A stretch of DNA of 63,656 nt, filler included, from Octopus bimaculoides (taxonomy: Eukaryota), in the NCBI RefSeq assembly GCF_001194135.2. It is 5 parts of 5 records of this genome, joined end to end, with 100 filler letters (N's around TTAATTAATTAA, not from the genome) between each part and the next. Parts side by side here need not be neighbours in the genome. Positions count along the whole stretch, not along the records: positions 44,759 to 63,656 come from NC_069010.1; 4 more parts are not named here. One strand, given 5' to 3'. How positions within the stretch are numbered: position 1 is the stretch's first letter; each line of letters starts with the position of its first letter. This document shows positions 44,759 through 63,656 of this stretch, piece after piece. The notes below the pieces were generated by a model. That model did no database searches, was not told the origin of the DNA, and was given only the letters and a program-made list of their open reading frames with translations. The position numbers were made by a program, and so were the translations under genes.

Positions 44759-45313
44759 ATCTGAAAAATCACCGAAATGTGAAAACTACCCACCCTCCCA
44801 TCTGTTATAACTTTTGTTGTTCTGTTTAATATGTACATAGATTATGCCTCCGTTTAAAAAGACAGCAACAGACTGCAGCAATTCACCACATTCCAGAAGT
44901 TACTTTGAACATAATGCAAAACGGTGCATCATTATCTACTGCCCAATCTGATAGAATTCTGGCAGAACTGTGTAGCAACAGATCGCCAGCAATTGCTTCA
45001 TCAGAAATTGCCGTCCTATCTCCTGCGAAAAGGAATTACCCTGCTATGTGTAATCAAGGCAGCGCAAAAAGTTGTTTTGCATAAACGTTTGTATAGCCAA
45101 TTAGCCGGATGAAATTTACGTACACTTAATAATGTTACACAAAACAGCCTTCAGACTTCCCCTATTAATTTAGTCTTTTGAATTATGAACATATTTACAT
45201 CATAAGGGTTTTTTCATTGTAAGGCTTTCTTTTTTAGTTGATTTTCACCTAGCAAGACTTATCGTAGATGGCGTAATAAGTCTCACCCGGACAACGTCAG
45301 GTTATACTGCTAG
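44759..45313 (+). mobile_element. Helitron 3' end
   Basis: Subterminal hairpin-like cccggacaacgtcagg (45286-45301) followed by CTAG (45310-45313) and then T. Confidence 0.7.
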
Positions 45314-46394
45314 TTTGAAATAAAACAGACGACGGCAAGACTAATTATGGTAAACGAGAAGGACAAGAAAAAAAGGAAAACAACAAGTTGTAGAAGGAGA
45401 AAAACAAGGAAAGAAAGAAGAAAAAGAAGAAAGAAAGGATTCCAAGCAGAAGAAGAGAGGACTCCAAGAAGAGGAAAATAAATTTAGAACAAGTAACAGA
45501 AAACGGAAAGAGAAAGAAATAAAATAATGAAAAAGTAAACAAAGAAGAAAAAGAAGAAGAAGATGAAAATGAAGAACAAGTGCAACAACGATAAACACAA
45601 CAAAAAAAACACAGAAGGAAGTATAAAAAAGGAGGAAAAAGAGAAAGAAAGACGGGGAGAAAATAAATATGAAGAGAAACAAGCGGAGCAGGAAGATATT
45701 GATTTGAATAATAAATCGATGTCTATGATGATGATGATGATGTTGGTGTTGATGAAGAGGATGAGGAAGGGCGTAATGACAGGAATGATGCTCAAGCTGA
45801 TGAGGATTATGGCAATAAAAATGCTGTCAATAATGATGATGACTATCATGATGGTAGTGATCTTGCTTACGTTAGTGATGATGATGATGATGATGGAGAG
45901 GATTATGAGGATTATGAAGATGATGATGAATTTTGAGGAAAAGAAAAGAAACGAAATGAAAGAAAGAAATGCAGAGGAAAAGGAAAGATAAGAAGAAGCG
46001 AGCGAAGGAAGAAAAAAGACATAAGAAATGCAGTTGCTGAAGAAGAAAACAGAAAGGTAAAAAAGTACATAAAAACGTAGAAATGTCGGTAAATTATCAG
46101 AAAGTGGAAAAGTCCAGTCATTCGATATACACCTGAAACTGCACAGCATCTGAAGAGTTTATTGCGAGAGAAATAGGAGTGAATTAATGAAACGACATTT
46201 TTGTTATTCCACAACACTAAAATAGTTTCTACATGTCGTCACAGCCATAAATTATTGATGAGATGATATCATTAATATACTTCGTAATCCTTACAATCAT
46301 TCAAAGCTGTAAAATATGCTTTCTCAATTGTATATTGGAAGGAGTTCTACGTTCCATCATACTTTCGTTTCACTGACACATGCTAAACTGATAC

Positions 46395-46562
46395 AGTTAT
46401 ACCTGTATATATTTATCTTTTACCTATTTTACTCATTAGATTCGGCCATGCTAGAACGCCACCTTGAAAGGTTTGAGTCGAATGTATCAACCCTGTAATT
46501 ATTTTTGAAGGCTTGTTACTTATTTTATTGGGTTCTTTTGCCGAACCGTTACGCGAGGGCGT
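46395..46562 (-). mobile_element. SINE family A tail fragment
   Basis: tcggccatgctagaacgccaccttgaa...cttttgccgaaccgttac. Confidence 0.65.
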
Positions 46563-46962
46563 GGAGAAGAAAATAGACTCCAAGATACACATGTATGTAT
46601 ATACATGCATCATATGACAGACCTGATTCCGTTTCTTTGTACCAAATCCCCTGTAAAGGAATTGGTGCACCCGAAGAGGAAAATCCGGTACACGAGTCTT
46701 GAACTACGTGGTTTGCAACAATCTTCTTACTAAACAGTCACCTGTGTCTGTATATATATGCTTATGTGTGTGTACGTGTGTGAGTGTGTGCATGAGGGTA
46801 CGTGTCTGTGTATGTGTGTGTGTTTGTGTAAATAAGAGTGCATATGATTGTGTGCGCGTGTTTAGCCCAGAAATTTTCTGAAATAGTTCTTCAAAGAAAA
46901 ACGAATTACTTTTTCAAATCTGAGTCCTAATAAATAGGTCATCCATAAATATTAATAAAAAC

Positions 46963-47120
46963 AGGAGTGGCTGTGTGTTAAGTAGCTTGCTTACCAACCA
47001 CATGATTCTGTGTTCAGTTCCACTGCGTGGCATCTTGGGCAAGTGTCTTCCACTATAGCCTCGGGCCGACCATAGCCTTGAGAGTGGATTTGGTAGACGG
47101 AAACTGAAAGAAGCGCGTCG

Positions 47121-47151
<31 letters not shown>

Positions 47152-47364
47152 GTGTGTGTATATGCTTGTGTGTCTGTGTTGGTCCCCCAACATCACTTGA
47201 CAACCGATGGTGGCGTGTTTACGTCCCCGTAACGTAGCGGTTTGGCAAAAGAGATCGATATAATAAGTATAAGGCTTACAAAGAATAAGTCCTGGGGTCG
47301 ATTTGCTCGACTAAAGGCGCTGATCCAGCATGGCCGCAGGCAAATGACTGAAACAAGTAAAAGA
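46963..47364 (+). mobile_element. Full-length SINE family A inserted into a duplicated intron block
   Basis: Colinear with 40733-41177; absent from the paralogous block at about 49755. Confidence 0.9.
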
Positions 47365-47825
47365 CTATCCCCTACGTGAAGTAAATCTCGATGAAAGTAT
47401 ATCACTCACACTTTCTCTTTGTGAGTGTTCATGTGAGTAAGGTATTTCGTTAGGGTATCAGAATGATTTTAAAACTATTTAAGACAATTATTAATAGCAT
47501 CATTTTCGCTTAGTAAATATAATTTTTCTTCCAAAGACAAAGAGAAACACACACGGACACAAACGTACACACCATAGACACACAGATATAAACATACATG
47601 ATTATATAAAACCATACTTTCATGCACAAAACATTTATTTATTCACACACAGAAAGACACATACAATTGTATACAACTTCAAACACTCACAAACGGAGAT
47701 ATAATGATGAAATATAAATTAGGAAGGCAGTGAGAGAGAGAGAGAGAGCAAGGGTAGTAAAGAGATGATATGAAATTTCTAGTGATATTACCTTCATAAA
47801 TATTATCCACAAAAAATGAACTTAC

Positions 47826-47897
47826 AATCTCTGTAAATTGGTAAGATCCTGGAAGATTCCACGGTCGATTTTCTTGATTTTATTATGGTTCAAACTT
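47826..47897 (-). CDS. LRR exon 9 (type A): SLNHNKIKKIDRGIFQDLTNLQRL
   Basis: 72 nt, atgcaacag|A ... TT|gtaagt, phase 2-2, matches LxLxxNxIxxIxxxxFxxLxxLxxL. Confidence 0.9.
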
Positions 47898-48324
47898 CTG
47901 TTGCATAAAATAGATTATAAAGGAAATAGTACAGGAAATTATTTAGTAAAACATTAAATTTGGAGATCTATGAAATAGAAAAGCGTGATAATGATAATGA
48001 GGTAGAGGAGCCATAGGAGGTGGTGGAGGAGAAGGAGAAGTATGAGGTGGGTAGGAAGTGAAGAGAGGAAGCAAGAGAAAAGGAGGAGGGGAAGAGAAGG
48101 ATTGGGAGCAGGGAAGGAGGTGGAAGGAGATGATGATTATGATAATGATGGTGATGCTGAACATAAAGATAAATAATGAGGGAAGGAGAGGAGCAGGTGC
48201 GGAGGGGACGGGGTGGAGTGGAGTGGTGGAGGAGGAGGTGGAATAAAGAGGCGATACAATGGAAAAATGAGCGGACTAACGGAGATGAAGATAAACAAGA
48301 CGTAGAAGAAAAATGTGTAAAAAG

Positions 48325-48491
48325 TAATAGTAGTAGTAGTAGTATTAGTAGTAGTAGTAGTAGTAGTAGTAGCAGCAGCAGCAGTAGTAGTAGTAGTAGT
48401 AGTAGCAGAAGCTGAAGCAGCAGTAGGAGTAGTAGTAGCAGTAGTAGCTGTAGTACTAATACTAGCAGCAGTTCTAGTAGTAGTAGTATTG

Positions 48492-48533
<42 letters not shown>
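48325..48533. repeat. (TAG)n/(CAG)n microsatellite
   Basis: Direct inspection. Confidence 0.9.
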
Positions 48534-50000
48534 NNNNNNNNNNNNNNNNNNNNNNNNNNNNNNNNNNNNNNNNNNNNNNNNNNNNNNNNNNNNNNNNNNN
48601 NNNNNNNNNNNNNNNNNNNNNNNNNNNNNNNNNNNNNNNNNNNNNNNNNNNNNNNNNNNNNNNNNNNNNNNNNNNNNNNNNNNNNNNNNNNNNNNNNNNN
48701 NNNNNNNNNNNNNNNNNNNNNNNNNNNNNNNNNNNNNNNNNNNNNNNNNNNNNNNNNNNNNNNNNNNNNNNNNNNNNNNNNNNNNNNNNNNNNNNNNNNN
48801 NNNNNNNNNNNNNNNNNNNNNNNNNNNNNNNNNNNNNNNNNNNNNNNNNNNNNNNNNNNNNNNNNNNNNNNNNNNNNNNNNNNNNNNNNNNNNNNNNNNN
48901 NNNNNNNNNNNNNNNNNNNNNNNNNNNNNNNNNNNNNNNNNNNNNNNNNNNNNNNNNNNNNNNNNNNNNNNNNNNNNNNNNNNNNNNNNNNNNNNNNNNN
49001 NNNNNNNNNNNNNNNNNNNNNNNNNNNNNNNNNNNNNNNNNNNNNNNNNNNNNNNNNNNNNNNNNNNNNNNNNNNNNNNNNNNNNNNNNNNNNNNNNNNN
49101 NNNNNNGGAGGGGAGAAGGAGGAGGGGAGAAGGAGGAGGGGAGAAGGAGGAGGGGAGAAGGAGGAGGGGAGAAGGAGGAGGGGAGAAGGAGAAGAAGGAG
49201 GAAAATAAAATGAGACGTGGAAGAAAAAAGGAGAAGCGGAAAAAGTAAAGACTGATAAAATATTAAAATTGTGTCGAGAATAAACTGAAGGACGGAATGT
49301 GAGAATGATAACCATGGTGATGATGATATGATGAGGAAGATGGTGATGATGGTGATTATGAAGTTAATGACGGTGATGGTGCGGAACGGTTTAAGCATGA
49401 TGGTGATGACCATCTTAATGTCAATATCATCGAATAATCTCACGGTTTGGATGTTGATGTTGATAATAATTATTGATTAGGACAAGAAACACTAGTGATG
49501 AATATGTTGATGATGACGATAATACTGATGAAGACGTGATGATGATGTTGAAATGCATTGAGAAAAAGAAAGGAAAGGAAAGGAAAAGAAACAAAGAGAT
49601 GAAGAAAGAAACAAAGAAAGTATTGAAGGAAGATGTGATTATGTAGGTGTGTTCATCTCAGAACGGTTCTGAAAATTTCTTCCTCGAGAAAAACGAATTC
49701 CTTTTTGAAATCTGAGTCTCATAGAATAGGTCATCCATAAATATTAATAAAAACTTATAATTACCTACGTAAAATATCTCTCGAAATGACACGTAACACA
49801 CATATATAAACATTTATATTCACATAAAATGGACGAAACATTTATTCACTCAGACACATACACTCGTACGTATATTTTGTACGCACAAACAAATATATAA
49901 TGACAGAATAGGAATTTGAAAAGCAGAGAGGAAAAGAAGATATGAAATCTCTAGTTATACTGCATTAATAAAAAAAAATATCGACAAAAACGGAACTTAC

Positions 50001-50072
50001 AACATCCACAAACTGGTAAGATTTTGGAAGATTCCTCGTTCGATTTTCTTGATCTTATTATGATCCAAACTT
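50001..50072 (-). CDS. LRR exon 8 (type A): SLDHNKIKKIERGIFQNLTSLWML
   Basis: 72 nt, atgtaacag|A ... TT|gtaagt, phase 2-2, open. Confidence 0.9.
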
Positions 50073-51382
50073 CTGTTACATAAACCAGATTATAAAGGAA
50101 ATTGTACAGAAAATTATTTGGTAAAACATTAAATTTGTTGTCATAGAATCAAATGAAAAAAAGGGTTATAACGGAGAAAAACGTGATGATGATGATGAAA
50201 AGAAGGAGGTTTGGATAGAGGAAGAGGTAATATGAGATGGGAAGGAGGCAGAGGGGAAGTTAGATAAGAGGCAGGGAAGAGAAGTAGGGGAGCATGGAAG
50301 GAGGGGAATTTGGAGGAGGGAAAAAAGACAGGTTGAGAGGACACGAGGAGGGAAAGACAGGATGAGGTGAAGAGAAAGTGGAAAAAAGAGACGATGCACA
50401 TTGAGAAATTGTACGTAATAACGAAGGTGAAGGAAAAAGTCATAGGTGGCACAGATCTATAGAAGTGCAAGTAAATTATGATGAAACGAAAACGACGCAT
50501 GAGAAATGGAAAAAGCAGTTGAAAAATTTTAATTGATGAGAGGAAATATATTATGAACATGAACGATGGAGAAGAAAATTGAGAAGAGAAAAGATGCAGG
50601 AATAAAATACATAGTACAAGGAAGAGGAGGAAAGTAGCAACGAGAATCACAATGTAGAAAAGAGGGAGAAGAAAATAAATATGAATATAAATAGTACGGT
50701 CACATATCTGCACATACACACAAGCATTTTCGCACAGAATATCAATCGCTGCTGTAGATACGCCCATACATACTAAACACAAATCCCTTCACAGACATAC
50801 ATTCAAACCCAATCAAATACTTTCACACAAAAATTGAGAGGGATGATATGAATTAGAGAAGAATAAAGCTGGAAGAAAAGTGTGATGTGAAGACAATAGG
50901 TATTCAGAATAATACTTGGAAGATATTGCTCATACCATAACCATGAAGATGTCCGTGATATGAAAGAGATTTGATAAGCAATTCTAATTCGGATAAATAA
51001 TATATATTGTTAATATTGAGACTTAAAAATGACATTATGGAAAAGAAGAAAGATAACGACGAAGAAAAGGAGAAAGAAGAATAGGATGGCAATTATGAAG
51101 GCGGAGATAACAAAGGAAAATACTTAGTAGTAGTAGTATTAGTAGTAGTAGCAGTTGTAGTAGTGGCAGCAACAACAGCAGCAGGAGCAAAAAGAAGAGG
51201 GGGAGGAGAAGAAATAAATCATGATGATGATGCTAAACAAAAGTAAACAAGGAGAGGAAGAAAAAGGAGAAGAAGAGGAAGACAAAGTAGATGTAAAAGA
51301 AATGGAATTAGAAGGGGAAAAAGAAGAAAAGATGATGTGGAAAAAGAGCTGACAGTATTAGGTATGTGAATGAGTGGGTGTA

Positions 51383-51414
<32 letters not shown>

Positions 51415-51789
51415 GTTGCATGTGTATGTAGATGTAAGAGTCAATAGTGAGTCAGGGGCAGTCTTAAGGGTATGTGAATGTGTGGGTGTGACTGTTTGTT
51501 TATGCCTGTGAGTGTGTCGAAGTATACGTATGTGTGTGTATATATGTGCAAGTGTGCATGCGTTGTGTGTTTGTGTTGCGTGTGTGGAGTAGTGTCGAGT
51601 GCGAGGAGGTATATGTGCGTTCATGTGTGAGTGTGTGGGTGAGTTTATGTACGTGTTTGTGCGTGCGAGTGTATGTGTATGCATGAGAGGGAGATCGGGA
51701 TGTGGTGGAGTGTGTGCTTACGCTGGTGTAGTCAATGGTATGGGTATCGCGTGCGGGCGGGCGGGCGTGTATGCTTGTGTGGTGGTAAC

Positions 51790-52190
51790 TAGCTGGAGGC
51801 GACGGATGGCCTGCAGGATCTTCAGACGAAGTGTAGGGTGGCGGAGTGGAAAGGGGGAGAAAGTTGGGAATCAATGTGGGAAGGAAAGAGGGAGGTAGTA
51901 CGACCAATTTAGTACGAGCGCTGTAAAGGCAGTTTGGACAAGGATGGATGTGTATCCGCGAGGTATGAAGAAGAGAGGGAAATATTGGGATTGGGTCTCA
52001 AAGCCTAGTGCCGACTGCACAGGCATCGGAGGCGGAGGAACTGAGACAATGAAATAGTCCATTTGGTGTTGAAAGGATGGGAGAAGGAACGTTGAAGTAG
52101 AGGTAGAAGTCTGTGGGTTTAAAGAAGGTGGAGGTGGTGAGAGAGAGGGTAAGGGTATCAATGGCTAGTGTGATATCGTGGAAGTTTATG
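51790..52190 (-). mobile_element. Decayed Penelope-like RT C-terminal fragment (intronic)
   Basis: FFKPTDFYLYF...SHPFNTK..ISLSQFLRLRCLCS matches the PLE KPTD...YL...SxHP...SQFLRLRRLCS motif. Confidence 0.8.
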
Positions 52191-52203
52191 GAAGTATGAG
52201 AGA

Positions 52204-52240
<37 letters not shown>

Positions 52241-52254
52241 ATATATAATATGAA

Positions 52255-52400
52255 AGTCCTCTGAGTTTCCGTCTACAAAACTCAGAAAGTATAGGTCATC
52301 TCGAGGCTATAGCAGGAGTCATGCGCCAAATTTGTCACAGTGGTACTGAGATCTAAACCGTGTCGTCGAAGCGTCTTACTACATAACCATACCAATCCTA
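52255..52400 (-). mobile_element. Degenerate SINE family A head
   Basis: tttccgtctac.aaac...ctcgaggctatagca matches the reverse complement of the head/core. Confidence 0.6.
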
Positions 52401-52968
52401 ATATATATATATGCTTGTGTATGTATATGTGTGTTTGTGTGTGTATGTATATGTGTGTTTGTGTGTGTATGTGTGTGTTTGTGTGTATATGTATGCGAAT
52501 ACATATATTCATACACAGCAAACATATATATTCACTCCATTTTCATACTTCAAAATATGTAACAGAAACTCAGAGATCTTAACGTAAAAACCTTTCTCTT
52601 TCATTTTCTCATGTTAAATTTTCTAACACTTTATGAAAGTACGTCTCTCGCACCATATGTGTCGGCATCTTTATCAGTGTCTGTGGGAATTATTTAAAAC
52701 ACAGTGTAAAATAATTGTTTTGATAACGTAATTTACTGTTAATAATTATGATTTTCTTAAACACATATACACACACCAATATACACGAATATACACGCGT
52801 GCACACAGAAAAGGAAAGACACATATTCACATAAATTCATACTCCCATACACAATATGTCGAAAATAAGTTAGGGAGAGATGGAGAAACAGAGCGAGAAG
52901 AAAGAGAAGATATATAATTTCTAGAGATATCACATTAATAAAATATTAACGACAAAAATTTAACTTAC

Positions 52969-53040
52969 AATCTCTGTAAAGTGGTAAGGTTGTGAAAGAT
53001 TCTGCGATCGATTTTGTCGATCTTATTATTAGTGAGATAT
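52969..53040 (-). CDS. LRR exon 7 (type A): YLTNNKIDKIDRRIFHNLTTLQRL
   Basis: 72 nt, atgttacag|A ... TT|gtaagt, phase 2-2, open. Confidence 0.9.
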
Positions 53041-53365
53041 CTGTAACATATATAAAAGAAATAGTAAACGAAAGTTTTCTGATAAAATATTTAATCTTTA
53101 ATCTTAAAATCAGATGAATAACAAGGGACAGTGAAAGACAAAAACTTAATGATGATTATGATGATAATAATGATAGATGAAAGAGGGAATACAGAATCAG
53201 AAATTGATAGTGATATAGAAAACAGTTAAAAAATGATTCCTAGAACATACAATTTTAAAGAAATGGAAACTGATGAAACGAAACATAAGTATCAAAATTT
53301 GAAAATGTAGTTGAAACATATTTTGAGAAGAGTTGATGAACATGGTAAATGTAAAGGACAATTGT

Positions 53366-53565
53366 GAAGAAGAAGAAGAAGAAGAAGAAGAAGAAGAAGA
53401 AGAAGAAGAAGAAGAAGAAGAAGAAGAAGAAGAAGAAGAAGGAGGAGAAGGAGGAGGAGGATAAGGAGAGAAAGAAGAAGAAGAATAAGAAGAAGAAGAG
53501 GAAGGAGGAGGAGGAGGAGGGGAGGAGAAGAAGAAGAAGAAGAAGAAGAAGAAGAAGAAGAAAAA
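53366..53565. repeat. (GAA)n/(GGA)n microsatellite
   Basis: Direct inspection. Confidence 0.95.
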
Positions 53566-54391
53566 AAATAAATAAAATAAGAACAAATATTTCAGTGAGT
53601 TGAAGTGAACTTTAAAGGAAGAGATCATATCTGAAAGAAAAACACATGCTTTTAGTGAGAACCGCACATATACTTATACAGTCATACACGCATACACTTA
53701 GGTACACGTTATCAATGATTGTTTCAGTTATATTCACATTCACACATACACATTTATACACATTCATACGCAAATGTGGTGAGAGAGTATTAGTTTAAGA
53801 GAAAGAAGTCGAGGGAGGTAGTGACGTCAGAAAAGAAATATTTAGAAATACAACATCAGTGAAATAGCATCAGGAAAATGTTAGAAATTACGAATGCTGC
53901 AAGCTGATGACTTTTACAGAGAGGAAGATATGTGTGACTATATTATAAGTATTTATATATTCCAGTTCTACATCCAGAGGTTGTATTATATAAATAAGCT
54001 ACACTGACTAAAGAAATGGGAGAGGAAGAGAAAATTGGGGGGAAGGAAGGACGGCAAAGAACAAGAGGAAAACCAAAATTCAAGAAGGGAATCAATATCG
54101 AAGGAGGAGCTAAAACATGGTTACGAGTTATATAGTCAAAAATATATACGCCGCCACACAAATGCATATAAACATACATATTACACTTCAATTTATATGG
54201 TTTCTTACAAGCATATATAAAATCCCTGTTGTTCTCAGCTTCATTCAAAATCAAAGTAATTTAACGCAAATATAAGGGCAGAATATGAGTGAGAGTGAAA
54301 GGAATAAAGAATAAAAGGGAAAAGAGCGGACATTAAATGCATAGAAATATTACATGCATAATGTAGTATCAACAGAATTAAACGGACTTAC

Positions 54392-54463
54392 AATTCTTTT
54401 AAACTTGGAAGACCCTGGAAGCTTCCTTTTTCAATATGCGAAATTTTATTTTGGTGAAGGTAT
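54392..54463 (-). CDS. LRR exon 6 (type B): YLHQNKISHIEKGSFQGLPSLKEL
   Basis: 72 nt, ttttctcctatag|A ... TT|gtaagt, phase 2-2, open. Confidence 0.9.
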
Positions 54464-55741
54464 CTATAGGAGAAAAGAAGAAGGATATGTGTTGATCTAG
54501 AAAATCTTTGTCATAAGATATTAAATAAAGATTCTTTAAAATGGAAGAATGGATGAGAGGACCGATTGCGATAAAAAAGGAGAAGAAAAAGGTGAATAAT
54601 TTAGTGAAAAAGAAGGAATTAAGAAAAGAAGCAGGTGAAGAAGATGAAGTCGAAGTAGATGGATTTGAAGAGGAAGTAGAAAAGAAAGTGATAATAAAGA
54701 TGTTTGAATAGAATAAACGCAAGAGAGGGACAATTTGTTACAGTCTGTCAGATTCCGACCATGATGAAATACCACAAGGTATTGAAAATACGTATTCGCC
54801 TTTATATATTTAATCCTTTATATTGAACACTCAATATTTCATATATTCAATAAGACATATTCCATATATTCAATAAGACATTCAATACTTCATTTCATTG
54901 TACCATCCATTTTTACAGTATATATTATATATTCCATATTTTATATCCCACATTAATTTTACAAGAATATAAATAAAACATAAGAAACAGAGTTGGAAGT
55001 CTTTTAATTAAAATAATATATTTCTCCATACACGATCATACAAANNNNNNNNNNNNNNNNNNNNNNNNNNNNNNNNNNNNNNNNNNNNNNNNNNNNNNNN
55101 NNNNNNNNNNNNNNNNNNNNNNNNNNNNNNNNNNNNNNNNNNNNNNNNNNNNNNNNNNNNNNNNNNNNNNNNNNNNNNNNNNNNNNNNNNNNNNNNNNNN
55201 NNNNNNNNNNNNNNNNNNNNNNNNNNNNNNNNNNNNNNNNNNNNNNNNNNNNNNNNNNNNNNNNNNNNNNNNNNNNNNNNNNNNNNNNNNNNNNNNNNNN
55301 NNNNNNNNNNNNNNNNNNNNNNNNNNNNNNNNNNNNNNNNNNNNNNNNNNNNNNNNNNNNNNNNNNNNNNNNNNNNNNNNNNNNNNNNNNNNNNNNNNNN
55401 NNNNNNNNNNNNNNNNNNNNNNNNNNNNNNNNNNNNNNNNNNNNNNNNNNNNNNNNNNNNNNNNNNNNNNNNNNNNNNNNNNNNNNNNNNNNNNNNNNNN
55501 NNNNNNNNNNNNNNNNNNNNNNNNNNNNNNNNNNNNNNNNNNNNNNNNNNNNNNNNNNNNNNNNNNNNNNNNNNNNNNNNNNNNNNNNNNNNNNNNNNNN
55601 NNNNNNNNNNNNNNNNNNNNNNNNNNNNNNNNNNNNNNNNNNNNNNNNNNNNNNNNNNNNNNNNNNNNNNNNNNNNNNNNNNNNNNNNNNNNNNNNNNNN
55701 NNNNNNNNNNNNNNNNNNNNNNNNNNNNNNNNNNNNNNNNN

Positions 55742-55803
<62 letters not shown>

Positions 55804-55997
55804 AGAAATACAGGGGTACATATTCATATAAAATCCTTCTCTCATATAAAAAATGTCGAAAATAGGTTATTGGAAAAGAGATAGAGAGAGATATAGGGAG
55901 ACAGGAGAGCGATAGGCAAACATACGGAAAGAGAAGTTGGTATAATTTCTAGAGAAATTACGTTACAAAAAACATTAGCAACAAAAATTGAACTTAC

Positions 55998-56069
55998 AGC
56001 ATCTGTAAACTGGTAAGATTGTGTAACATCACACGATCAATTTTTTTTACCCTATTTTTACGCAAATCT
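55998..56069 (-). CDS. LRR exon 5 (type A): DLRKNRVKKIDRVMLHNLTSLQML
   Basis: 72 nt, tatgttacag|A ... CT|gtaagt, phase 2-2, open. Confidence 0.85.
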
Positions 56070-56813
56070 CTGTAACATAAAACAATGTGTAAATGAAACA
56101 ATAAACGAAAGTTTTATGATAAAATATTTAATCTTCAGTTTTAAACGCAAATGAAGAACATAGAACAATAGATGAGAATTCATGATGAAGATGAGGAGGA
56201 GGAGGAGAAGGAGGATAATGATGAAAGTGGTGGTACGGAATCAGAAATTGATGGAAATATCGGAGATGTTGAAGGAAAATCAATCATAGCAGGTATAGAT
56301 ATACAAAAGTGGAAGCAGATGAATCGAAGAAGAAAACTAAGAACAAGCAGAAGAACAACGAAAACTAAAAGAACAAGAAAAAGAAGATGAAGAAGAAAAG
56401 GAGGAGGAGCAGAGCAAGAAAATAAGATGGAGGAGGAAAGTATGTCGCTCACATCGTGTGTTTCAGCGTGTTTATCAGTGTCTGTGTATATGCATGTCAG
56501 AAAGGTATTTAATCAGTAGAGGGAATGATTCAAAACGCTGTGTAAAATAATTGTTTCAATAGAATAATTTAATGTTAACTATGATATCTCTTACACACAC
56601 AGACATACCAACGTACATGAACATACAGGCACAGACACAGGAATACAAAAATATATATTAACATCAAATCAGACTCTTATACATGAAATATCAAAAATAT
56701 GTCAGAGGAAAAGAGAAAGAGAGAGAGAGAGAGGAAGGGACTAAGAAATAGATGATATATAATTTCTAGATATATTGTGTTAGTAAAATATAATCAAACA
56801 AAATTCAACTTAC

Positions 56814-56885
56814 AATATCTGTAAACTGGTAAGGTTATGGAAGGTTCCGCGATCGATTTTCTCGACCCTATTGATACGCAAATCT
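56814..56885 (-). CDS. LRR exon 4 (type A): DLRINRVEKIDRGTFHNLTSLQIL
   Basis: 72 nt, tttcgttacag|A ... TT|gtaagt, phase 2-2, open. Confidence 0.9.
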
Positions 56886-57278
56886 CTGTAACGAAACACA
56901 AAGTATAAAGGAAATAGTAAACGAATGCTTTCTGATAAAATATTTTATCTTCCGTCTTAAAATCAAATGAAGAACATAGGACAATGAAAGACAAAAACTA
57001 AATGGGGATGATGATGATGATGATGATGATGATGACGACGACGACGACGAGAACGACGATGATAATGATGATGATGAAACAGGTGATACAGAATCAGAAA
57101 TTGATGGAAATATCGAAGATGGTGAATGAAAAGTCAATCACAATTTATAGATTTATAGAATTGGACGCTGATGAATCGAAACAGATGCATCAGAAGTTGA
57201 AAAAGTAGTTCAGACAAATTTTTGAGACGAAGAAGAAAGGTAGCGTGATGAACATGATCAAGGTAAAGGAATTTTGTG

Positions 57279-57455
57279 AAGAAGAAGAAGAAGAAGAAGA
57301 AGAAGAAGAAGAAGAAGAAGAAGAAGAAGAAGAAGAAGAAGAAGAAGAAGAAGAAGAAGAAGAAGAAGAAGAAGAAGATGAAGAAGAAGAAGAAGAAGAA
57401 GAAGAAGAAGAAGAAGAAGAAGAAGAAGAAGAAGAAGAAGAAGAAGAAGAAGAAA
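57279..57455. repeat. (GAA)n microsatellite
   Basis: Direct inspection. Confidence 0.95.
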
Positions 57456-57846
57456 GAATTTAAAAAAGACAACAGTTTGTCTTAGATATGTAAACTGAAG
57501 AAATTGGAGATGAATAAAAAAATCCTAGAGGAAAAGAAGATGGTAAAGAACAAGAGGAAAAAGAAGATTCAAGACTGGAATGAAAAACGGAGGAAGTAAA
57601 ACATATGGATGCGAATTATATAGTCAAATATATATACGCAGCCAAGCAAATTCATTTTCATATAAACACATATAAAAGTCTTGTTGTACTATTCTTCATA
57701 CACAATCCAAGCAATATAACGTAAATATCGGTACAGAATATAAGTAAGAATGAAATAATTAAAGAATTAAAGATAAACGAGAGGACATTAAATGTATAGA
57801 AATATTACATGCATAATGTAGTATCAACAAAATTAAACGAACTTAC

Positions 57847-57918
57847 AATCCCTTTAAACTTGGAAGACCATGAAAGACTCCTTTTTCAATATGTGAAATA
57901 TTATTTAGGTAAAGATAT
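57847..57918 (-). CDS. LRR exon 3 (type B): YLYLNNISHIEKGVFHGLPSLKGL
   Basis: 72 nt, ttttctactctag|A ... TT|gtaagt, phase 2-2, open. Confidence 0.9.
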
Positions 57919-58429
57919 CTAGAGTAGAAAAGAAAGACGGTAAGTGTTGATATAGAAAATATTTGCAATAAGATATTAAATGAAGATTCTTTAAGATGGG
58001 GTGGTTATGAGGGGAGAGATTGCGATAAATATGAAGTTGAATAAAATGTAGAAGGAGGAAGAGGAGGAGAAGAAGGGGAAGCAGGGAAAGGAGACAAAAA
58101 GAATAAGTGAAACAGCAAGGGCAACAAGCAAACGAAGAAAAGAAGAGAAGAAAAAGAAGAAAAGGAAGAAGACGGAGAAGAAAATGAAGAAGAAAATTGA
58201 ATCAATATAATTATAAGTGTAAACAGAAGAAAGAGAAATAAAGATGAAGATTAGAAAAAGATGCGAAAGAAGTAGAATGATAAGACAGAGAAAAAGAAAT
58301 GAAAGAAAAGGACAAAGCGGAGCAAAGGGAAAGATTAACGAAGGAGAAGAAGAACAAAAACAAGAACTACAGCAACAAATGCATCAAGAAGTGAAAAAAG
58401 AAGAAAAAGAAGAAGGAGGTGGCGAACCC

Positions 58430-58570
58430 TGCTGTACTCTTTCACTTCCTGTTTCTGTTGTGCGTGTAATTCAAAGGGTCAGCCTTGTCACACTGTGTGA
58501 TGCTGAATATCCCCGAGAACTACGTTAAGGGTACACGTGTCTGTGGAGTGCTCAGCCACTTGCACGTTAA
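58430..58570 (+). mobile_element. Internal fragment of SINE family C
   Basis: caaaggg.cagccttgtcacact...gagaactacgttaagggtacacgtgtctgtggagtgctcagccac matches 22370-22470. Confidence 0.85.
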
Positions 58571-58796
58571 GAAGAAAAAGAAGGAAAGAAGAAAAATTAG
58601 AAGAAGTATAAATATAAAGTGTAAAATGAAGTAAAAAAATTAAAGATTAAGATTTGAAAAAGATGAGAACGACTGAAGAATTTGAAGAAGAATTAAAGTA
58701 GAAGAGAATGAAGAGAAAGAACAAGACGAAGGAACAGCGGAAGAAGAGGAAAAAAGAAGAAAGATGTGAAGAAGAATTAGGAAAGAAAGAACTGCA

Positions 58797-58982
58797 GAAG
58801 AAGAAGAAGAAGAAGAAGAAGAAGAAGAAGAAGAAGAAGAAGAAGAAGAAGAAGAAGAAGAAGAAGAAGAAGAAGAAGAAGAAGAAGAAGAAGACGGCAA
58901 AGAGAAGAAGAAGAAGAAGAAGAAGAAGAAGAAGAAGAAGAAGAAGAAGAAGAAGAAGAAGAAGAAGAAGAAGAAGAAGAAA
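58797..58982. repeat. (GAA)n microsatellite
   Basis: Direct inspection. Confidence 0.95.
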
Positions 58983-59378
58983 AGATCGTGCAGAAGACGC
59001 TGGAAAATAAAAAGACGAACAGGTCTTATTAGATCCCTAAACTAAATTGAATGAAGAAACTAGAAATAAATGAAAGAATTTGGAGGAAGAGAATACGGTA
59101 AAGAACAACAAGAAAAACAAAATTCAGGACGGGAAGAAAAAACGAACGTGGAAGTAAAACGCCGCCACACAAATACATATGAACATATACATTACACTTG
59201 TATTTATATGGTTTCTTGCAAACATATATAAAATCCCAGTTGTTTTCAACTTCATTCCAAATCGAAACAATATAACGCAAATTTAAGGACACAATATGAG
59301 TGAGAGTGAAAAGAATAAAGAATAAAAGGGGAAATATTACATGGACTGTGTAGTATCAACAAAATTGAACGAACTCAC

Positions 59379-59450
59379 AATTCTTTCAGATTTACAAGAC
59401 CACTGAAGCTTCCTTTTTCAATATGCGAAATTTTATTTTGGTGAAGATAT
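59379..59450 (-). CDS. LRR exon 2 (type B): YLHQNKISHIEKGSFSGLVNLKEL
   Basis: 72 nt, ttttctcttatag|A ... TT|gtgagt, phase 2-2, open. Confidence 0.9.
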
Positions 59451-59666
59451 CTATAAGAGAAAAGAAAGAGGATAACAGGAAAGAAGGAGGATAAGTGATG
59501 ATATAGAAAACATTTGCAATAAGATATTAATTAAAGATTCTTTAAAATGGGAGAATGGATGAGAGGAGGGATTGCGATAAATAAGACGCAGTAGAAGAAA
59601 ACAAAAGAAGAAAAAAGTTTAAGAGGGGCTAAAGCAGCAGCATTAGTGATAATAATAATAATGATG

Positions 59667-59711
<45 letters not shown>

Positions 59712-59771
59712 AGAAGAAGAAGGGAAGGAGGAGGAGGAAGAAGAAGAAGAAGAAACACACACTTACACACA

Positions 59772-59805
<34 letters not shown>

Positions 59806-61065
59806 NNNNNNNNNNNNNNNNNNNNNNNNNNNNNNNNNNNNNNNNNNNNNNNNNNNNNNNNNNNNNNNNNNNNNNNNNNNNNNNNNNNNNNNNNNNNNNN
59901 NNNNNNNNNNNNNNNNNNNNNNNNNNNNNNNNNNNNNNNNNNNNNNNNNNNNNNNNNNNNNNNNNNNNNNNNNNNNNNNNNNNNNNNNNNNNNNNNNNNN
60001 NNNNNNNNNNNNNNNNNNNNNNNNNNNNNNNNNNNNNNNNNNNNNNNNNNNNNNNNNNNNNNNNNNNNNNNNNNNNNNNNNNNNNNNNNNNNNNNNNNNN
60101 NNNNNNNNNNNNNNNNNNNNNNNNNNNNNNNNNNNNNNNNNNNNNNNNNNNNNNNNNNNNNNNNNNNNNNNNNNNNNNNNNNNNNNNNNNNNNNNNNNNN
60201 NNNNNNNNNNNNNNNNNNNNNNNNNNNNNNNNNNNNNNNNNNNNNNNNNNNNNNNNNNNNNNNNNNNNNNNNNNNNNNNNNNNNNNNNNNNNNNNNNNNN
60301 NNNNNNNNNNNNNNNNNNNNNNNNNNNNNNNNNNNNNNNNNNNNNNNNNNNNNNNNNNNNNNNNNNNNNNNNNNNNNNNNNNNNNNNNNNNNNNNNNNNN
60401 NNNNNNNNNNNNNNNNNNNNNNNNNNNNNNNNNNNNNNNNNNNNNNNNNNNNNNNNNNNNNNNNNNNNNNNNNNNNNNNNNNNNNNNNNNNNNNNNNNNN
60501 NNNNNNNNNNNNNNNNNNNNNNNNNNNNNNNNNNNNNNNNNNNNNNNNNNNNNNNNNNNNNNNNNNNNNNNNNNNNNNNNNNNNNNNNNNNNNNNNNNNN
60601 NNNNNNNNNNNNNNNTATATATATATATGTATGTATATATATATATATGTATGTATATATATAAACAATATATACGGGCGTGCAATTTATAGGACAGATC
60701 CAGGTAATAATTACAAGATACCTAAGTGATGCTTAAGTGTCCAAGGAAACAATGATCACACTTCCGGGATAAGTAAGTCGTATTTAGGAGAAAATAGGGA
60801 AAATTGAAAAAGGAGACAAGCGCTCAGGATGTTATTAACGCATTTATCTCTTCATATCTTCTACATATATTTCAATGGATGCATTCAAAATACGTGGGAC
60901 TGGAAGGATTATGGTCAGCTATGTATCAATCTCATCAGGAAAGATATTAAAAACAATACTCATCAAATAGACTTTCTTACAGATATAAGAAACCCTAGAA
61001 AATGTGACGCATTTATATGCATATGCACGCACACGTTCACATATATATGCAACATGTATACATAA

Positions 61066-61096
<31 letters not shown>

Positions 61097-61878
61097 CATA
61101 CGCACAAACACACACACATATATGTGTATATATATTTGTATTTATATTTTACTCGGCACGTGCAAAAACACAAATATATACGTTAATAAACGTTTTCGAG
61201 CATCTACTTATATGCATAAAAACACGTTTACATACACGTAAAAGTGCATACACATCCCAAATAGATAAACCTAAACACATACATACAGAGGACACATATT
61301 TACTTAAGCACATATACACGTTTGTATACAAACATAGCAAACATAGCATACGTACATAGAGGAGCAAAACCAGATATATACACATATACACATATAGAAA
61401 GCCAAGTAGTGAGGGAACACTAAATATTTAAAATTGTCCTTAGGGAAATATACATTATAGGGTGCGAGAAAAAGAAAAGGTATAGAAAGACAGGGGAAAA
61501 AAGAAAACAATGAAAGAAAGAGAGAGATAGTAGAGAGTAACGGGCCAAATTGTATAAATAAAGGTAGGAAGAGAATAAAGAAGGGACGAATAATATTTAT
61601 GTGAAATAATATAGATGAATAAAGAAAAGATAATTTGCAAAAAATTATTATTATAACGTGCAAATACTAGTTGAAAAACTGAAGAAATTTTTTTTCTGGT
61701 GCCTACACTTGTAAACAACCTCTATAAACCTATTTACCAGTTTATGTTTGAAAAAAGAGATTAAAAATTGCAATGCTTTTCCGTTGAAAGAGAGGCAAAG
61801 TCAGAGACATGCAAAAGTAGGAAATTGAAGATGTATAATCCCTATTGATAAAATATTATCAACAAATATTTAACTCAC

Positions 61879-61950
61879 AATATCTGTAATCTGGTAAGGT
61901 TGTGGAAGATTCCACGACCGATATTCACGACAATATTACGACTCAAATCT
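61879..61950 (-). CDS. LRR exon 1 in window (type A): DLSRNIVVNIGRGIFHNLTRLQIL
   Basis: 72 nt, tgtatgttacag|A ... TT|gtgagt, phase 2-2, open. Confidence 0.88.
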
Positions 61951-62067
61951 CTGTAACATACAACAAAGTATTAACAAAAATAGTTAAAGAAAGTTTTGTC
62001 AGAAAATATTTAATATTCAGACTTAAAAACAGATGAAGAACACATTACGATGAAAGACAAAAGCCTA

Positions 62068-62088
62068 ATGATGATGATAATAATGATA

Positions 62089-62148
<60 letters not shown>
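62068..62148. repeat. (GAT)n microsatellite
   Basis: Direct inspection. Confidence 0.95.
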
Positions 62149-62150
<2 letters not shown>

Positions 62151-62269
62151 AGAGGTGGCAGAATTTGATGGTAATATCGGTTACGGTGAAGGAAAGTCAT
62201 TCATAGAACATATAGAAGAAGAAAAGCAAGATGAAAAAGATGATACAGAAGAATGCGTAGAAGAGGAAT

Positions 62270-63656
62270 ATTATTATTATTGTTCAGTAGTTTTATTTTT
62301 ATAACGTGCTGTCACTTCACTACCGAGCGCAGCTCTGTGCGTCTTGGGTATGTGCTGTGGTTTGCTGTGATGCTCTTATCGTTACTGTATTGAAAGTGTT
62401 TTGCGTAGGATGTGTGCAGTGCTCAGTAGTGCAATTTTCTGTATGTTATATATATTTGAAAGTCTTGATGTTTTTGTTATGTATTTGTCTGAATATTTTT
62501 TTTATTATACCTAAGGCACCTACTATGATACGAATTGTTTCTGTTTTTAGATTCCACATTCAAGTCACTTCTATTTCCAGGTCTTTGTATTTTGAAAGTT
62601 TTTCCATTTCTTTTAGGGAAACGTTGTCATCTGCTGGTTGATACATCAATTAGAAAGCATTTTTTTTTCTTCATGATCTTTGACAACTATATCTGGTCTA
62701 TTTGCCTTAATTTCTCTGTGTGTATTGGCATATCCCAGAGTATGGTTGCTTTCTCGTTTTCTGTGACCTTTTCTGGCATGTGTTTATACCATCTTTTTTC
62801 TGTTGTTATTCCATAGTGTTGGCATAGCTTCCAGTGTATATAGGTCCCAGCTCTGTCGTGTCTGTGAATATATTCCTTCTTAGCCAGGACTGGGCAGCCA
62901 GAGATAATATGATTCATTGTTTCTTGTCGATCTCCACATATTCTACAGTTACTTGTTATGTTTCTTTCCATTGTGTGTTTTTGGTAATGTCTGGTAGGGA
63001 GGCTTTGGTCTTGTGCAGCAATTAAAAACCCTTCAGTCTCTGCTTTGAGTCCTGAGCTTCTCCAGCATTGCTGGGATTTTTCTCTGTCTATTTCTTTTGC
63101 ATTTAGTTTAGCCCAGTATTTACCATGTAGGGGCTTTTCTTGCCATCGTTTTATCATGGCCCGTTGCTGTTCTAGTTTTAGTTTGGATTTCATTTGTTTT
63201 ATAACTTTTGTTGTTTCTTCTTCTTCTTCGTATTTGTTACGTATTATGATTTCTTGTTTGTATTTGTCAGCTTCCGTAAATATTGAAAACAGTTTTTTGT
63301 TTGCATGTGTTTTGTGGCTATTTCTATTAGTTTTCCTTGCTTCTGGAGTAGGTATTTTTGCAGTCCTATGGTTGGTTATTTTATAATAGTTTTCCAGCTG
63401 TATAAGATCCCTGCCACCTTCTGTGCGTTGTATATATAGCCTTTCTATGTCAGATTTTGGGTGGTGCATCCTATATCCTGTCATTATTTTTCTTGTTTTC
63501 CTGTCTATTTTACATAGTTCGTTTAGTGTCCAGTTAAGGATATTGTAGCTGTAACCTATAACTGGGACAGCTAAAGTGTTGATACCCATTATCTTGTTTT
63601 TAGCATTGAGCTCTGTTTTTAGTATTGATCTAACTCGTCTATAGTACTCTTTCTTT
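62270..63656 (-). mobile_element. R4/Dong-type non-LTR retrotransposon, 3' half (runs off the window), with (TAA)n tail
   Basis: 300-aa ORF 63589-62687 with HHPKSDIERLY, GLKAETEG..IAAQDQ, CCHC knuckle CRICGDRQETMNHIISGC and RHD; RLE motif NRPDIVVK in a shifted frame near 62680-62705. Confidence 0.95.

What the first reader, a model, noticed from the sequence alone, without database searches (positions are those of the whole stretch)
47826..61950. Hidden array of nine interchangeable 72-nt LRR exon cassettes
Seen in sequence: nine minus-strand exons, invisible to the ORF track, at 61950-61879, 59450-59379, 57918-57847, 56885-56814, 56069-55998, 54463-54392, 53040-52969, 50072-50001 and 47897-47826. 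Each is exactly 72 nt with canonical AG / GT(A/G)AGT sites, starts with A and ends in TT or CT, so every junction makes a Leu codon. Spliced, they give about 216 aa of stop-free 24-residue typical LRRs. Established: one-LRR-per-exon phase-2 architecture is known from LGR/RXFP/GRL101-type receptors and Slit, and octopus has expanded GRL101-like LGRs. Inference: because any subset of exons keeps the frame, the locus could produce a combinatorial repertoire of LRR ectodomains by exon skipping or copy-number variation. The residues that vary between cassettes include the exposed xLxxNx positions (DLSRN, YLHQN, YLYLN, DLRIN, DLRKN, YLTNN, SLDHN, SLNHN) that form LRR ligand-binding faces. This would resemble a diversified recognition receptor, either immune or chemosensory. 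More cassettes may lie in the gaps at 48534-49107, 55045-55741 and 59806-60615.
Basis: partly seen in the sequence, partly recalled or inferred. Interest (0 to 1): 0.9.

Follow-up and report, generated by a model that had tools for sequence, protein, structure and literature searches.

The report
Expressed LRR exon array, ordinary modular gene
The nine 72-base exons are real, transcribed and spliced in plain genomic order as part of a long leucine-rich-repeat protein gene built by tandem exon duplication, a well-known gene design, and I found no evidence that they are shuffled into a receptor repertoire.

Summary
Nine minus-strand 72-nt exons lie exactly where stated. All have AG/GTRAGT splice sites and phase-2 introns, and together they give 216 stop-free, cysteine-free residues of nine 24-residue typical LRRs (Pfam LRR_8, E=1e-81).

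RNA contigs from two public runs join the first eight exons in strict genomic order: 61950>59450>57918>56885>56069>54463>53040>50072. One contig continues at least 610 nt further upstream, beyond the piece. The assembly gaps at 59806-60615 and 55045-55741 therefore lie inside ordinary introns. The gap at 48534-49106 is not bridged. After exon 50072 the RNA continues into a near-identical cassette that is absent from the readable sequence, so at least one cassette is probably hidden there.

Each exon lies in a 0.25-1 kb paralogous exon-plus-intron block (61-73% identity), and the exons fall into two classes. This indicates growth by tandem duplication of one-exon units.

I saw no exon-skipping junction. 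The one exon-to-intron stretch tested is present in about ten DNA samples. Selection on the concave-face residues is not clearly positive. The gene family (LGR/GRL101, LRIG-like, chaoptin-like, TLR) cannot be assigned from LRRs alone.

One-LRR-per-exon modularity, and the idea of splicing-based LRR diversity, are already published. Verdict: an ordinary new member of a known kind, of low interest.

The parts
61879..61950 (-). LRR exon E1 (class A; DLSRNIVVNIGRGIFHNLTRLQI)
   Evidence: 72 nt with AG/GTGAGT sites. X27 716-nt RNA contig, depth 50, covers it and joins it to E2; the contig continues 610 nt further upstream.
59379..59450 (-). LRR exon E2 (class B; YLHQNKISHIEKGSFSGLVNLKE)
   Evidence: X27 contigs: the loose ends match the 3' end of E1 and the 5' start of E3.
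57847..57918 (-). LRR exon E3 (class B; YLYLNNISHIEKGVFHGLPSLKG)
   Evidence: The loose end of the X27 250-nt contig at 56885 matches the 3' end of E3, and the loose end at 59379 matches the 5' start of E3.
56814..56885 (-). LRR exon E4 (class A; DLRINRVEKIDRGTFHNLTSLQI)
   Evidence: X27 contig, depth 56, joins 56814 to 56069, skipping 744 nt with CT..AC ends, which is GT..AG on the minus strand.
55998..56069 (-). LRR exon E5 (class A; DLRKNRVKKIDRVMLHNLTSLQM)
   Evidence: It lies in the same X27 contig as E4, and the loose end at 55998 equals the 5' start of E6. X32 also shows E5 joined to E6.
54392..54463 (-). LRR exon E6 (class B; YLHQNKISHIEKGSFQGLPSLKE)
   Evidence: The loose ends place it between E5 and E7, in both X27 and X32.
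52969..53040 (-). LRR exon E7 (class A; YLTNNKIDKIDRRIFHNLTTLQR)
   Evidence: X27 276-nt contig, depth 54, and X32 contig, depth 7.8. Its 31-mers are held by RNA runs X42, X27 and X32, and by X43-47 whose library kind is not recorded.
50001..50072 (-). LRR exon E8 (class A; SLDHNKIKKIERGIFQNLTSLWM)
   Evidence: It lies in the same X27 276-nt contig directly after E7.
47826..47897 (-). LRR exon E9 (class A; SLNHNKIKKIDRGIFQDLTNLQR); its position in the mRNA is not established
   Evidence: Correct splice sites and frame. All 4 sampled 31-mers are held by RNA runs X42 and X27, and by X43-46 whose library kind is not recorded; all six also hold E7. However, no X27, X30, X32 or X33 contig could be laid on it, and the RNA does not join E8 to it.
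48534..49106 (.). Assembly gap that probably hides at least one more cassette (E8b, whose first 63 nt equal those of E8 and which ends ACAGAGATT)
   Evidence: X27 contig: E8 is followed by a second copy of its first 63 nt, then ACAGAGATT, then ATAT. None of these strings is in the readable window. A cassette midway between E8 and E9, about 1.09 kb from each, would fall inside the gap.
44759..63656 (-). Part of one transcription unit. The introns are 744-2896 nt, pyrimidine-rich on the sense strand, and each carries paralogous flanks of its exon.
   Evidence: Self-alignment finds exon-plus-intron blocks of about 0.25-1 kb at 61-73% identity. Flank similarity sorts by exon class.

Best explanation
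This is an internal segment of one ordinary, expressed protein-coding gene on the minus strand. The gene encodes a long, uninterrupted run of typical 24-residue leucine-rich repeats.

Each repeat is one 72-nt exon bounded by phase-2 introns that split the codon of the Leu at position 4 of LxxLxLxxN. In the RNA contigs examined, the first eight exons (E1-E8) are spliced one after the other in genomic order. They form part of a curved LRR solenoid. That solenoid is most likely the ligand-binding or adhesive ectodomain of a secreted or membrane protein. This is an inference from the typical-LRR subtype and from six N-x-S/T sequons, five of them at the same repeat position.

The array grew by tandem duplication (unequal crossing-over) of one-exon-plus-intron units. 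These units fall into two cassette classes: A (DLxxNxVxKIDRGxFHNLTSLQ) and B (YLHQNKISHIEKGSFxGLPSLKE).

The gene extends beyond the piece on both sides. At least 12 cassettes are evidenced, and there may be about 19 or more. At least one very recent copy (E8b) is probably collapsed into the assembly gap at 48534-49106. The rest of the protein, and so its family, lies outside the piece.
For: Shown:
- Exact exon anatomy and open frame.
- LRR_8 at E=1.3e-81.
- Exactly nine profile matches, all on the minus strand.
- RNA contigs of X27 (depth about 50-56) chain upstream>E1>E2>E3>E4>E5>E6>E7>E8.
- X32 independently shows E5>E6 and E6>E7, and E2 joined to an E3-like exon whose first 40 nt differ from the reference E3.
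- Exon depth is about 50 against 0 on introns.
- Two exons upstream of E1 the contig holds another class-A cassette (NMIDKIDRGVFHNLTRLQI).
- Paralogous exon-plus-intron blocks at 61-73% identity. Exon identity within a class is 49-63 of 72 nt, while introns are about 70% identical, and pN/pS is 0.47-0.61. Together these indicate purifying selection on the exons.
- The 216 residues contain no Cys and six N-x-S/T sequons.
- About ten DNA samples of the same organism hold 81-97% of the sampled words of 52800-54600. A second organism holds 20%, consistent with a conserved locus at roughly 95% identity.

Inferred: the extracellular location, the binding function, and unequal crossing-over as the duplication mechanism.
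Against: - The junctions of E9 were never seen. The E8>E8b contig contains the same 63-mer twice, which a k=31 de Bruijn contig should not do. The hidden-cassette inference therefore carries an artefact risk (see notebook entry 'unexplained').
- Logan contigs cannot exclude minor alternative isoforms.
- The three raw-read RNA runs (X24-26), sampled at about 6%, had no reads on the two exons tested, E4 and E5. No read-level junction counts exist.
- No full-length protein or close homologue was found. The best match is 41% identity. The domain architecture and family are therefore unknown.
Confidence: 0.8

Rival explanations
1. The cassettes are interchangeable modules that exon skipping and/or copy-number variation combine into a repertoire of different LRR ectodomains, forming a diversified immune or chemosensory receptor.
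For: - All exons are symmetric (72 nt, phase 2), so any subset keeps the frame.
- Class-A concave x positions have pN/pS of about 1.1.
- There are hints of instability. A near-identical extra cassette E8b appears in RNA. An X32 contig carries an E3 variant that is closer to E2 than the reference E3 is.
- Alternative splicing of modular LRR exons has been proposed for other families (PMC6642158).
Against: - No skipping junction appears in any placed contig from X27 or X32; all junctions join neighbours.
- All nine exons have equally strong GTRAGT donors, as expected for constitutive exons.
- The one stretch tested (52800-54600, holding E6 and E7) is present in about ten DNA samples.
- Class B shows no excess change on the concave face.
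- Cassettes within a class are 68-88% identical, so they are old and individually conserved rather than a rapidly turning-over set.
- Frame-preserving LRR exons are the rule in many constitutively spliced genes (PMC6642158).
Confidence: 0.07
2. The exons are the ectodomain of an LGR/GRL101-type leucine-rich-repeat G-protein-coupled receptor.
For: - One LRR per 72-nt phase-2 exon is the LGR gene design (from my own knowledge; met here).
- LGR4/5 ectodomains are among the good PDB matches at 135-154 bits.
- Some library hits combine many LRRs with 7tm_1, for example P0244 and P0419, P0426, P0454, P0487.
Against: - No 7TM, LDLa or hinge exon lies in the piece.
- LRIG1, IGFALS, LRRC15 and TLR3 match as well or better.
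- The best long-protein hits are chaoptin/artichoke-type.
- The evidenced repeat count (at least 12, possibly about 19 or more, uninterrupted) is at or above the top of the LGR range (about 17-18 in type B, about 10 in RXFP-type; from my own knowledge).
- The same exon design occurs in Slit and other families (PMC6642158).
Confidence: 0.2
3. The exons are relics: an unexpressed or decaying tandem array, or exon-like repeats inside a transposable element.
For: - No annotated protein containing them was found in the protein collections.
- E9 has no placed contig.
Against: - Exon-only RNA coverage at depth about 50, with canonical junctions, for eight of the nine exons.
- All nine frames are open, and pN/pS is below 1.
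- The 31-mers of E9 occur in the same six runs that also hold E7.
Confidence: 0.02

Closest known systems
LGR family receptors (type B LGR4/5/6 and bursicon receptor; type C RXFP and GRL101)
   Same: Typical 24-residue LRRs, each encoded by one exon of about 72 nt with phase-2 introns (from my own knowledge). LGR4/5 ectodomains align at 135-154 bits. The A/B/C1/C2 classification follows PMC11863921.
   Different: No 7TM, LDLa or hinge is visible. The repeat count probably exceeds the LGR norm. The internal A/B cassette pattern arises from lineage-specific tandem duplication. Membership is untested.
Slit1-3
   Same: LRRs encoded by modular frame-preserving exons. Alternative use of these exons has long been proposed (Little et al. 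2002, as cited in PMC6642158).
   Different: Slit LRRs come in four short blocks, each capped by Cys-rich LRRNT and LRRCT modules (from my own knowledge). Here there are 9-10 consecutive repeats with no cysteine at all.
LRIG1 (LRR plus Ig transmembrane protein)
   Same: Best-scoring solved structure by sequence (4u7l, 212 bits, E=6e-62), with a regular NxIxxIxxGxF typical LRR pattern.
   Different: The score is the sum of four overlapping stretches, the three main ones scoring about 73-81 bits each. IGFALS has a better single stretch at 88 bits. The Ig and TM parts cannot be tested, and LRIG1 has about 15 LRRs.
Chaoptin / artichoke / IGFALS-type long LRR proteins
   Same: Long uninterrupted arrays of typical LRRs. 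These are the top hits among 617-1890-aa proteins.
   Different: Identity is only 27-38% and is generic to LRRs, so there is no orthology evidence. The insect genes are not known to me as one-LRR-per-exon arrays.
NLR (NLRP3) modular LRR exons with regulated exon skipping
   Same: Strictly frame-preserving, repeat-matched LRR exons. Exon skipping gives functional isoforms (PMC6642158).
   Different: NLR exons are 171 or 84 nt of the RI-type LRR, and the proteins are cytosolic. No skipping was seen here.
Lamprey/hagfish variable lymphocyte receptors
   Same: A recognition surface built from interchangeable 24-residue LRR cassettes. VLRs appear among the sequence hits.
   Different: VLR diversity comes from somatic copy-choice assembly of cassettes that have no splice sites. 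Here the cassettes are ordinary exons, joined by splicing in fixed order.

Membership tests
Typical (T-type) LRR domain, Pfam LRR_8/LRR_1 | Tandem 24-residue repeats with LxxLxLxxNxI and a downstream F/L core, scoring above the Pfam cut-off | tested here: met
   LRR_8 E=1.3e-81 (268.7 bits against a cut-off of 27); LRR_4, LRR_1 and LRR_5 also pass. L, L, N, I, L and L are invariant at repeat positions 1, 3, 6, 11, 19 and 22.
LGR / GRL101-type LRR-GPCR | Rhodopsin-type 7TM domain C-terminal to the LRRs | not testable with these tools
   No such exon lies in 44759-63656. The downstream transcript could not be read: read laying shows only 30 loose letters, and all its calls are used.
LGR / GRL101-type LRR-GPCR | LDLa module(s) N-terminal to the LRRs (type C) | not testable with these tools
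   The upstream 610 nt of the X27 contig lie outside the piece. Only one further LRR cassette in it could be read.
LGR / GRL101-type LRR-GPCR | One LRR per exon of about 72 nt, all introns phase 2 | tested here: met
   This feature is shared with Slit and other families (PMC6642158), so it does not discriminate.
LGR / GRL101-type LRR-GPCR | About 9-18 LRRs between the LRRNT cap and the hinge | tested here: inconclusive
   Nine in the window, plus E8b, plus a following ATAT-starting exon, plus at least one upstream: at least 12 in all. If the whole 610-nt upstream contig part is LRR, the total is about 19 or more. No caps were seen.
Slit | LRR blocks of at most about 6-7 repeats, bounded by Cys-rich LRRNT and LRRCT caps | tested here: not met
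   Nine consecutive genomic cassettes (ten with E8b), with zero cysteines in 216 aa. The RNA joins them without intervening exons.
LRIG | 15 LRRs followed by three Ig-like domains and a TM helix | not testable with these tools
   Only LRRs lie in the piece. The top PDB rank of LRIG1 comes from summed overlapping stretches.
VLR-like somatically assembled LRR cassettes | Cassettes without splice signals, copied into an incomplete germline gene | tested here: not met
   All cassettes have AG/GTRAGT sites and are joined by intron removal in genomic order in RNA (skips 744 nt, CT..AC).
Dscam-type mutually exclusive cassette array | Neighbouring cassettes of one cluster are never spliced to each other; one is chosen per mRNA | tested here: not met
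   Adjacent cassettes, including same-class neighbours E2-E3, E4-E5 and E7-E8, occur together in single RNA contigs.

The most novel reading that the evidence does not exclude
The array is genetically unstable and individually variable. Recent unit duplication (E8/E8b) and gene conversion between same-class cassettes (the X32 E3 variant) would generate germline-polymorphic LRR ectodomains of different length and surface, possibly with low-level exon skipping. That would make it a cephalopod-lineage diversified recognition receptor built from spliced LRR cassettes.
Probability: 0.07. Interest if true: 0.7.

Novelty: new member of a known kind. Interest (0 to 1): 0.2.

Why it matters
As it stands, this is mainly an annotation result. 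It identifies a transcribed multi-exon LRR gene segment for which no matching product was found in the protein collections searched here. Those collections may simply not hold this organism's proteome. At least one of its cassettes is probably lost in an assembly gap.

It is a clean example of LRR-array growth by tandem duplication of single exon-plus-intron units with two alternating cassette types. It would become interesting only if read-level or long-read data showed combinatorial or individual-specific cassette use. That would be a new route to receptor diversity in an invertebrate lacking adaptive immunity. Nothing seen here points that way.

Tried and rejected
I therefore walked exon by exon using loose ends. 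All 8 calls are used, so I could not examine E9's junctions, the exon after E8b, or DNA reads across the gaps.

2. Raw-read RNA runs X24-26 gave no reads on E4 or E5 at about 6% sampling, so there are no junction counts.

3. Protein searches:
- The 215-aa peptide found nothing above 40% identity.
- The exhaustive representative search was swamped by giant LRR proteins, with a maximum of 41% identity.
- The search for homologous proteins appears to list only proteins between about 1/1.75 and 1.75 times the query length.
- I therefore used a 5x concatenated query as a search device. It still found no close relative, only artichoke/chaoptin-type hits at 38% identity or less.

4. The look-up of encoding contigs with the intronic retroelement ORF, tried in order to fetch flanking DNA, found nothing on record.

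6. Pfam scans of the most similar library proteins gave mixed architectures: LRR only, LRR plus Sushi and F5/8C, and LRR plus 7tm_1. This does not discriminate.

7. Rfam hits (mir-297, mir-466 and others) are all far below the gathering scores and lie in TG/TA low-complexity sequence. I rejected them as chance.

8. I considered a Slit-like reading (rejected: no caps and no Cys), VLR-like assembly and Dscam-like exclusivity (both rejected by the RNA junctions).

9. The organism could not be named, because run and organism labels are coded and the retroelement homologues are unnamed or from other phyla.

Full report
OBSERVATION

I extracted the nine claimed minus-strand segments. Each is exactly 72 nt, preceded by AG and followed by GTGAGT (two exons) or GTAAGT (seven). 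Each begins with A and ends in TT (eight) or CT (one). Every junction therefore rebuilds a Leu codon across a phase-2 intron.

The concatenated exons are open in that frame and give nine 24-residue repeats with no cysteine. L, L, N, I, L and L are invariant at repeat positions 1, 3, 6, 11, 19 and 22. Pfam calls the peptide LRR_8 at E=1.3e-81.

The signal is far above chance:
- With the strict pattern AG-72 nt-GTRAGT and an open phase-2 frame there are nine hits on the minus strand (exactly these exons) and one on the plus strand.
- A looser scan for 72-nt AG/GT LRR-like exons finds no further true cassette on either strand. Its only extra hit is a low-complexity frame-0 window overlapping E9.
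- An nhmmer profile of the nine exons finds exactly nine copies (E=2e-13 to 4e-20) and no degenerate pseudo-cassette in the readable sequence.

GAPS, AND WHETHER THE EXONS ARE USED

The run index found DNA and RNA runs of one coded organism ('organism A'). Logan RNA contigs of run X27 cover the exons at word depth about 50-56 and the introns at 0. Their joints and loose ends chain the exons as follows:
- A 250-nt contig joins 56814 to 56069 (skips 744 nt, CT..AC, which is GT..AG on the minus strand). Its loose ends match the 3' end of exon 57918 and the 5' start of exon 54463.
- Contigs on exon 59450 have loose ends matching the start of exon 57918 and the end of exon 61950.
- A 716-nt contig holds 34 nt of exon 59450, all of exon 61950, and 610 nt further upstream that are not in the piece. 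Two exons upstream, that stretch includes another class-A cassette, NMIDKIDRGVFHNLTRLQI.
- A 276-nt contig holds the end of exon 54463, then exon 53040, then exon 50072.

A second run, X32 (depth 5-8), independently shows 56069>54463 and 54463>53040. It also shows exon 59450 joined to an exon 57918-like exon whose first 40 nt differ from the reference.

The gaps at 59806-60615 and 55045-55741 therefore sit inside introns that the RNA bridges in frame. They hide no exon used in these transcripts.

The third gap, 48534-49106, is different. After exon 50072 the X27 contig continues with 63 nt identical to exon 50072, then ACAGAGATT, then ATAT. That cassette ('E8b') is 67/72 identical to exon 50072 and only 64/72 identical to exon 47897. 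Neither it nor its junction is anywhere in the readable window. A cassette midway between exons 50072 and 47897, about 1.09 kb from each, would fall inside the gap. At least one cassette, and probably also an ATAT-starting exon, is therefore missing from the assembly there, or the scaffold join is wrong.

A caveat applies. A k=31 de Bruijn contig should not contain the same 63-mer twice, so an artefact cannot be excluded.

Exon 47897 itself is ambiguous. No contig of X27, X30, X32 or X33 could be laid on it; only 19-22-nt fragments of a paralogous transcript matched. Yet the k-mer index says that all four of its sampled words are held by RNA runs X42 and X27, and by X43-46 whose library kind is not recorded. 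All six of those runs also hold exon 53040.

ANATOMY AND ORIGIN

The exons fall into two classes:
- Class A: DLxxNxVxKIDRGxFHNLTSLQ (exons 61950, 56885, 56069, 53040, 50072, 47897).
- Class B: YLHQNKISHIEKGSFxGLPSLKE (exons 59450, 57918, 54463).

Within a class, 49-63 of 72 nt are identical. Between classes the figure is 31-46. The 200-nt intron flanks sort into the same classes.

Self-alignment shows that each exon lies in a paralogous exon-plus-intron block of about 0.25-1 kb at 61-73% identity, always in the same orientation. The array therefore grew by tandem duplication of single exon-plus-intron units. The mechanism, unequal crossing-over, is inferred. Most copies are old, and E8/E8b would be a recent one.

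The exons are better conserved than the introns, and pN/pS within classes is 0.47-0.61. The cassettes are therefore under purifying selection. At the concave-face x positions pN/pS is 1.11 in class A (0.41 elsewhere) and 0.33 in class B (0.52 elsewhere). This is relaxed constraint at most, with very few sites.

Six N-x-S/T sequons occur. Five are the NLT at the same repeat position in class-A cassettes. Together with the typical-LRR subtype, this suggests an extracellular protein. That is an inference.

WHAT THE GENE IS

The piece contains only LRR exons, so the family cannot be decided.
- By sequence, the best solved structure is LRIG1 (212 bits). That score is the sum of four overlapping stretches, the three main ones scoring about 73-81 bits each. 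IGFALS (best single stretch 88 bits), LRRC15, TLR3 and LGR4/5 are equivalent.
- No protein above 41% identity exists in the collections I could reach.
- The search for homologous proteins seems to list only proteins within about 1.75-fold of the query length. I therefore also searched with a five-fold concatenated query as a device. It returned only insect artichoke/chaoptin-type and similar proteins at 27-38% identity.
- Pfam scans of the most similar library proteins give mixed architectures: LRR only, plus Sushi and F5/8C, or plus 7tm_1.

The product of this gene is thus either not annotated, or not present in these collections in the length ranges I could query. The organism could not be named.

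The symmetric design does allow in-frame skipping. That is true of many constitutively spliced LRR genes. Hoss et al. 2019 (PMC6642158) document enriched frame-preserving LRR exons with a 69-75-bp peak in several human families, including Slit. They already propose alternative splicing of LRR exons as a source of diversity.

In the data here:
- Every placed junction joins neighbours.
- All donors are equally strong.
- Same-class neighbours (E2-E3, E4-E5, E7-E8) are co-spliced, which excludes a Dscam-like mutually exclusive scheme.
- The cassettes have splice sites and are joined in order, which excludes VLR-like assembly.
- Nine to ten uninterrupted repeats without cysteine exclude a Slit-type block structure.
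- The only stretch tested, from E6 to E7 (52800-54600), is present in about ten DNA samples.

The negative evidence is limited. Contigs drop rare variants, and the three raw-read RNA runs had no reads on the two exons tested. The E8b cassette and the X32 exon-3 variant leave a small opening for copy-number or gene-conversion polymorphism.

VERDICT

This is a real, expressed array of LRR exons. The eight whose junctions could be read are spliced in plain genomic order. It belongs to a long LRR-protein gene of undetermined family, and its architecture is well known. The combinatorial-repertoire idea is unsupported. Interest is low, and the finding is a new member of a known kind.

Noticed in passing
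window 62687-63589 (-): A 300-aa ORF in the intron upstream of exon 61950 is the C-terminal part of a retroelement reverse-transcriptase ORF (Pfam zf-RVT, E=4.6e-7). A 93%-identical fragment occurs in a Logan assembly. Homologues at 40-50% identity are found in shrimp, sea anemone, hydrozoan and starfish genomes.
   Followed up: partly
window 47200-47390: A short interspersed repeat with enormous representation in RNA contigs of all four runs tested (summed word depth 1e4 to 5e5, hundreds of variant contigs). It looks like a very high-copy, widely transcribed SINE-like element lying about 450 nt downstream of exon 47897.
   Followed up: no
window 44759-63656, e.g. 53366-53562, 57278-57454, 58684-58985: The plus strand is strongly purine-rich throughout (GC skew up to +0.6, AT skew up to +0.44). 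Long (GAA)n tracts recur in several introns, at least partly as part of the duplicated unit (52670-53564 aligns to 56509-57472). On the sense strand these are (TTC)n polypyrimidine tracts.
   Followed up: partly
RNA run X32, contig laid at window 59379-59450: The exon following exon 59450 has a 5' 40 nt only 2 mismatches from exon 59450 (the reference exon 57918 has 4), followed by the 3' part of exon 57918. This is either an allelic or gene-conversion variant of that cassette in another individual, or a chimeric contig.
   Followed up: no
RNA runs X27 and X34, 166-nt contig touching window 50018-50061: A further paralogous cassette (…TLAYNKIKKIERGIFQNL…LQKL) is expressed at a depth similar to the gene (74 in X27) but is absent from the window. 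It comes either from another part of the same gene or from a co-expressed paralogue. A 2471-nt paralogous LRR transcript also exists in X33.
   Followed up: no
window 47826-47897: The tools disagree. The k-mer index reports all 4 sampled words of this exon in X27, but read laying laid no X27 contig on it.
   Followed up: partly
window 52404-52535 and 60616-61149: Sub-threshold Rfam matches (mir-297, mir-466, mir-1277, mir-3149; 30-44 bits against gathering scores of 81-101) fall on TG/TA-rich low-complexity repeats. I judged them chance.
   Followed up: yes
tool behaviour: the search for homologous proteins listed only proteins between roughly 1/1.75 and 1.75 times the query length (133-376 aa for a 215-aa query, 176-524 for 300 aa, 880-1883 for 1080 aa). 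A short exon-derived peptide therefore cannot retrieve its own long parent protein.
   Followed up: partly
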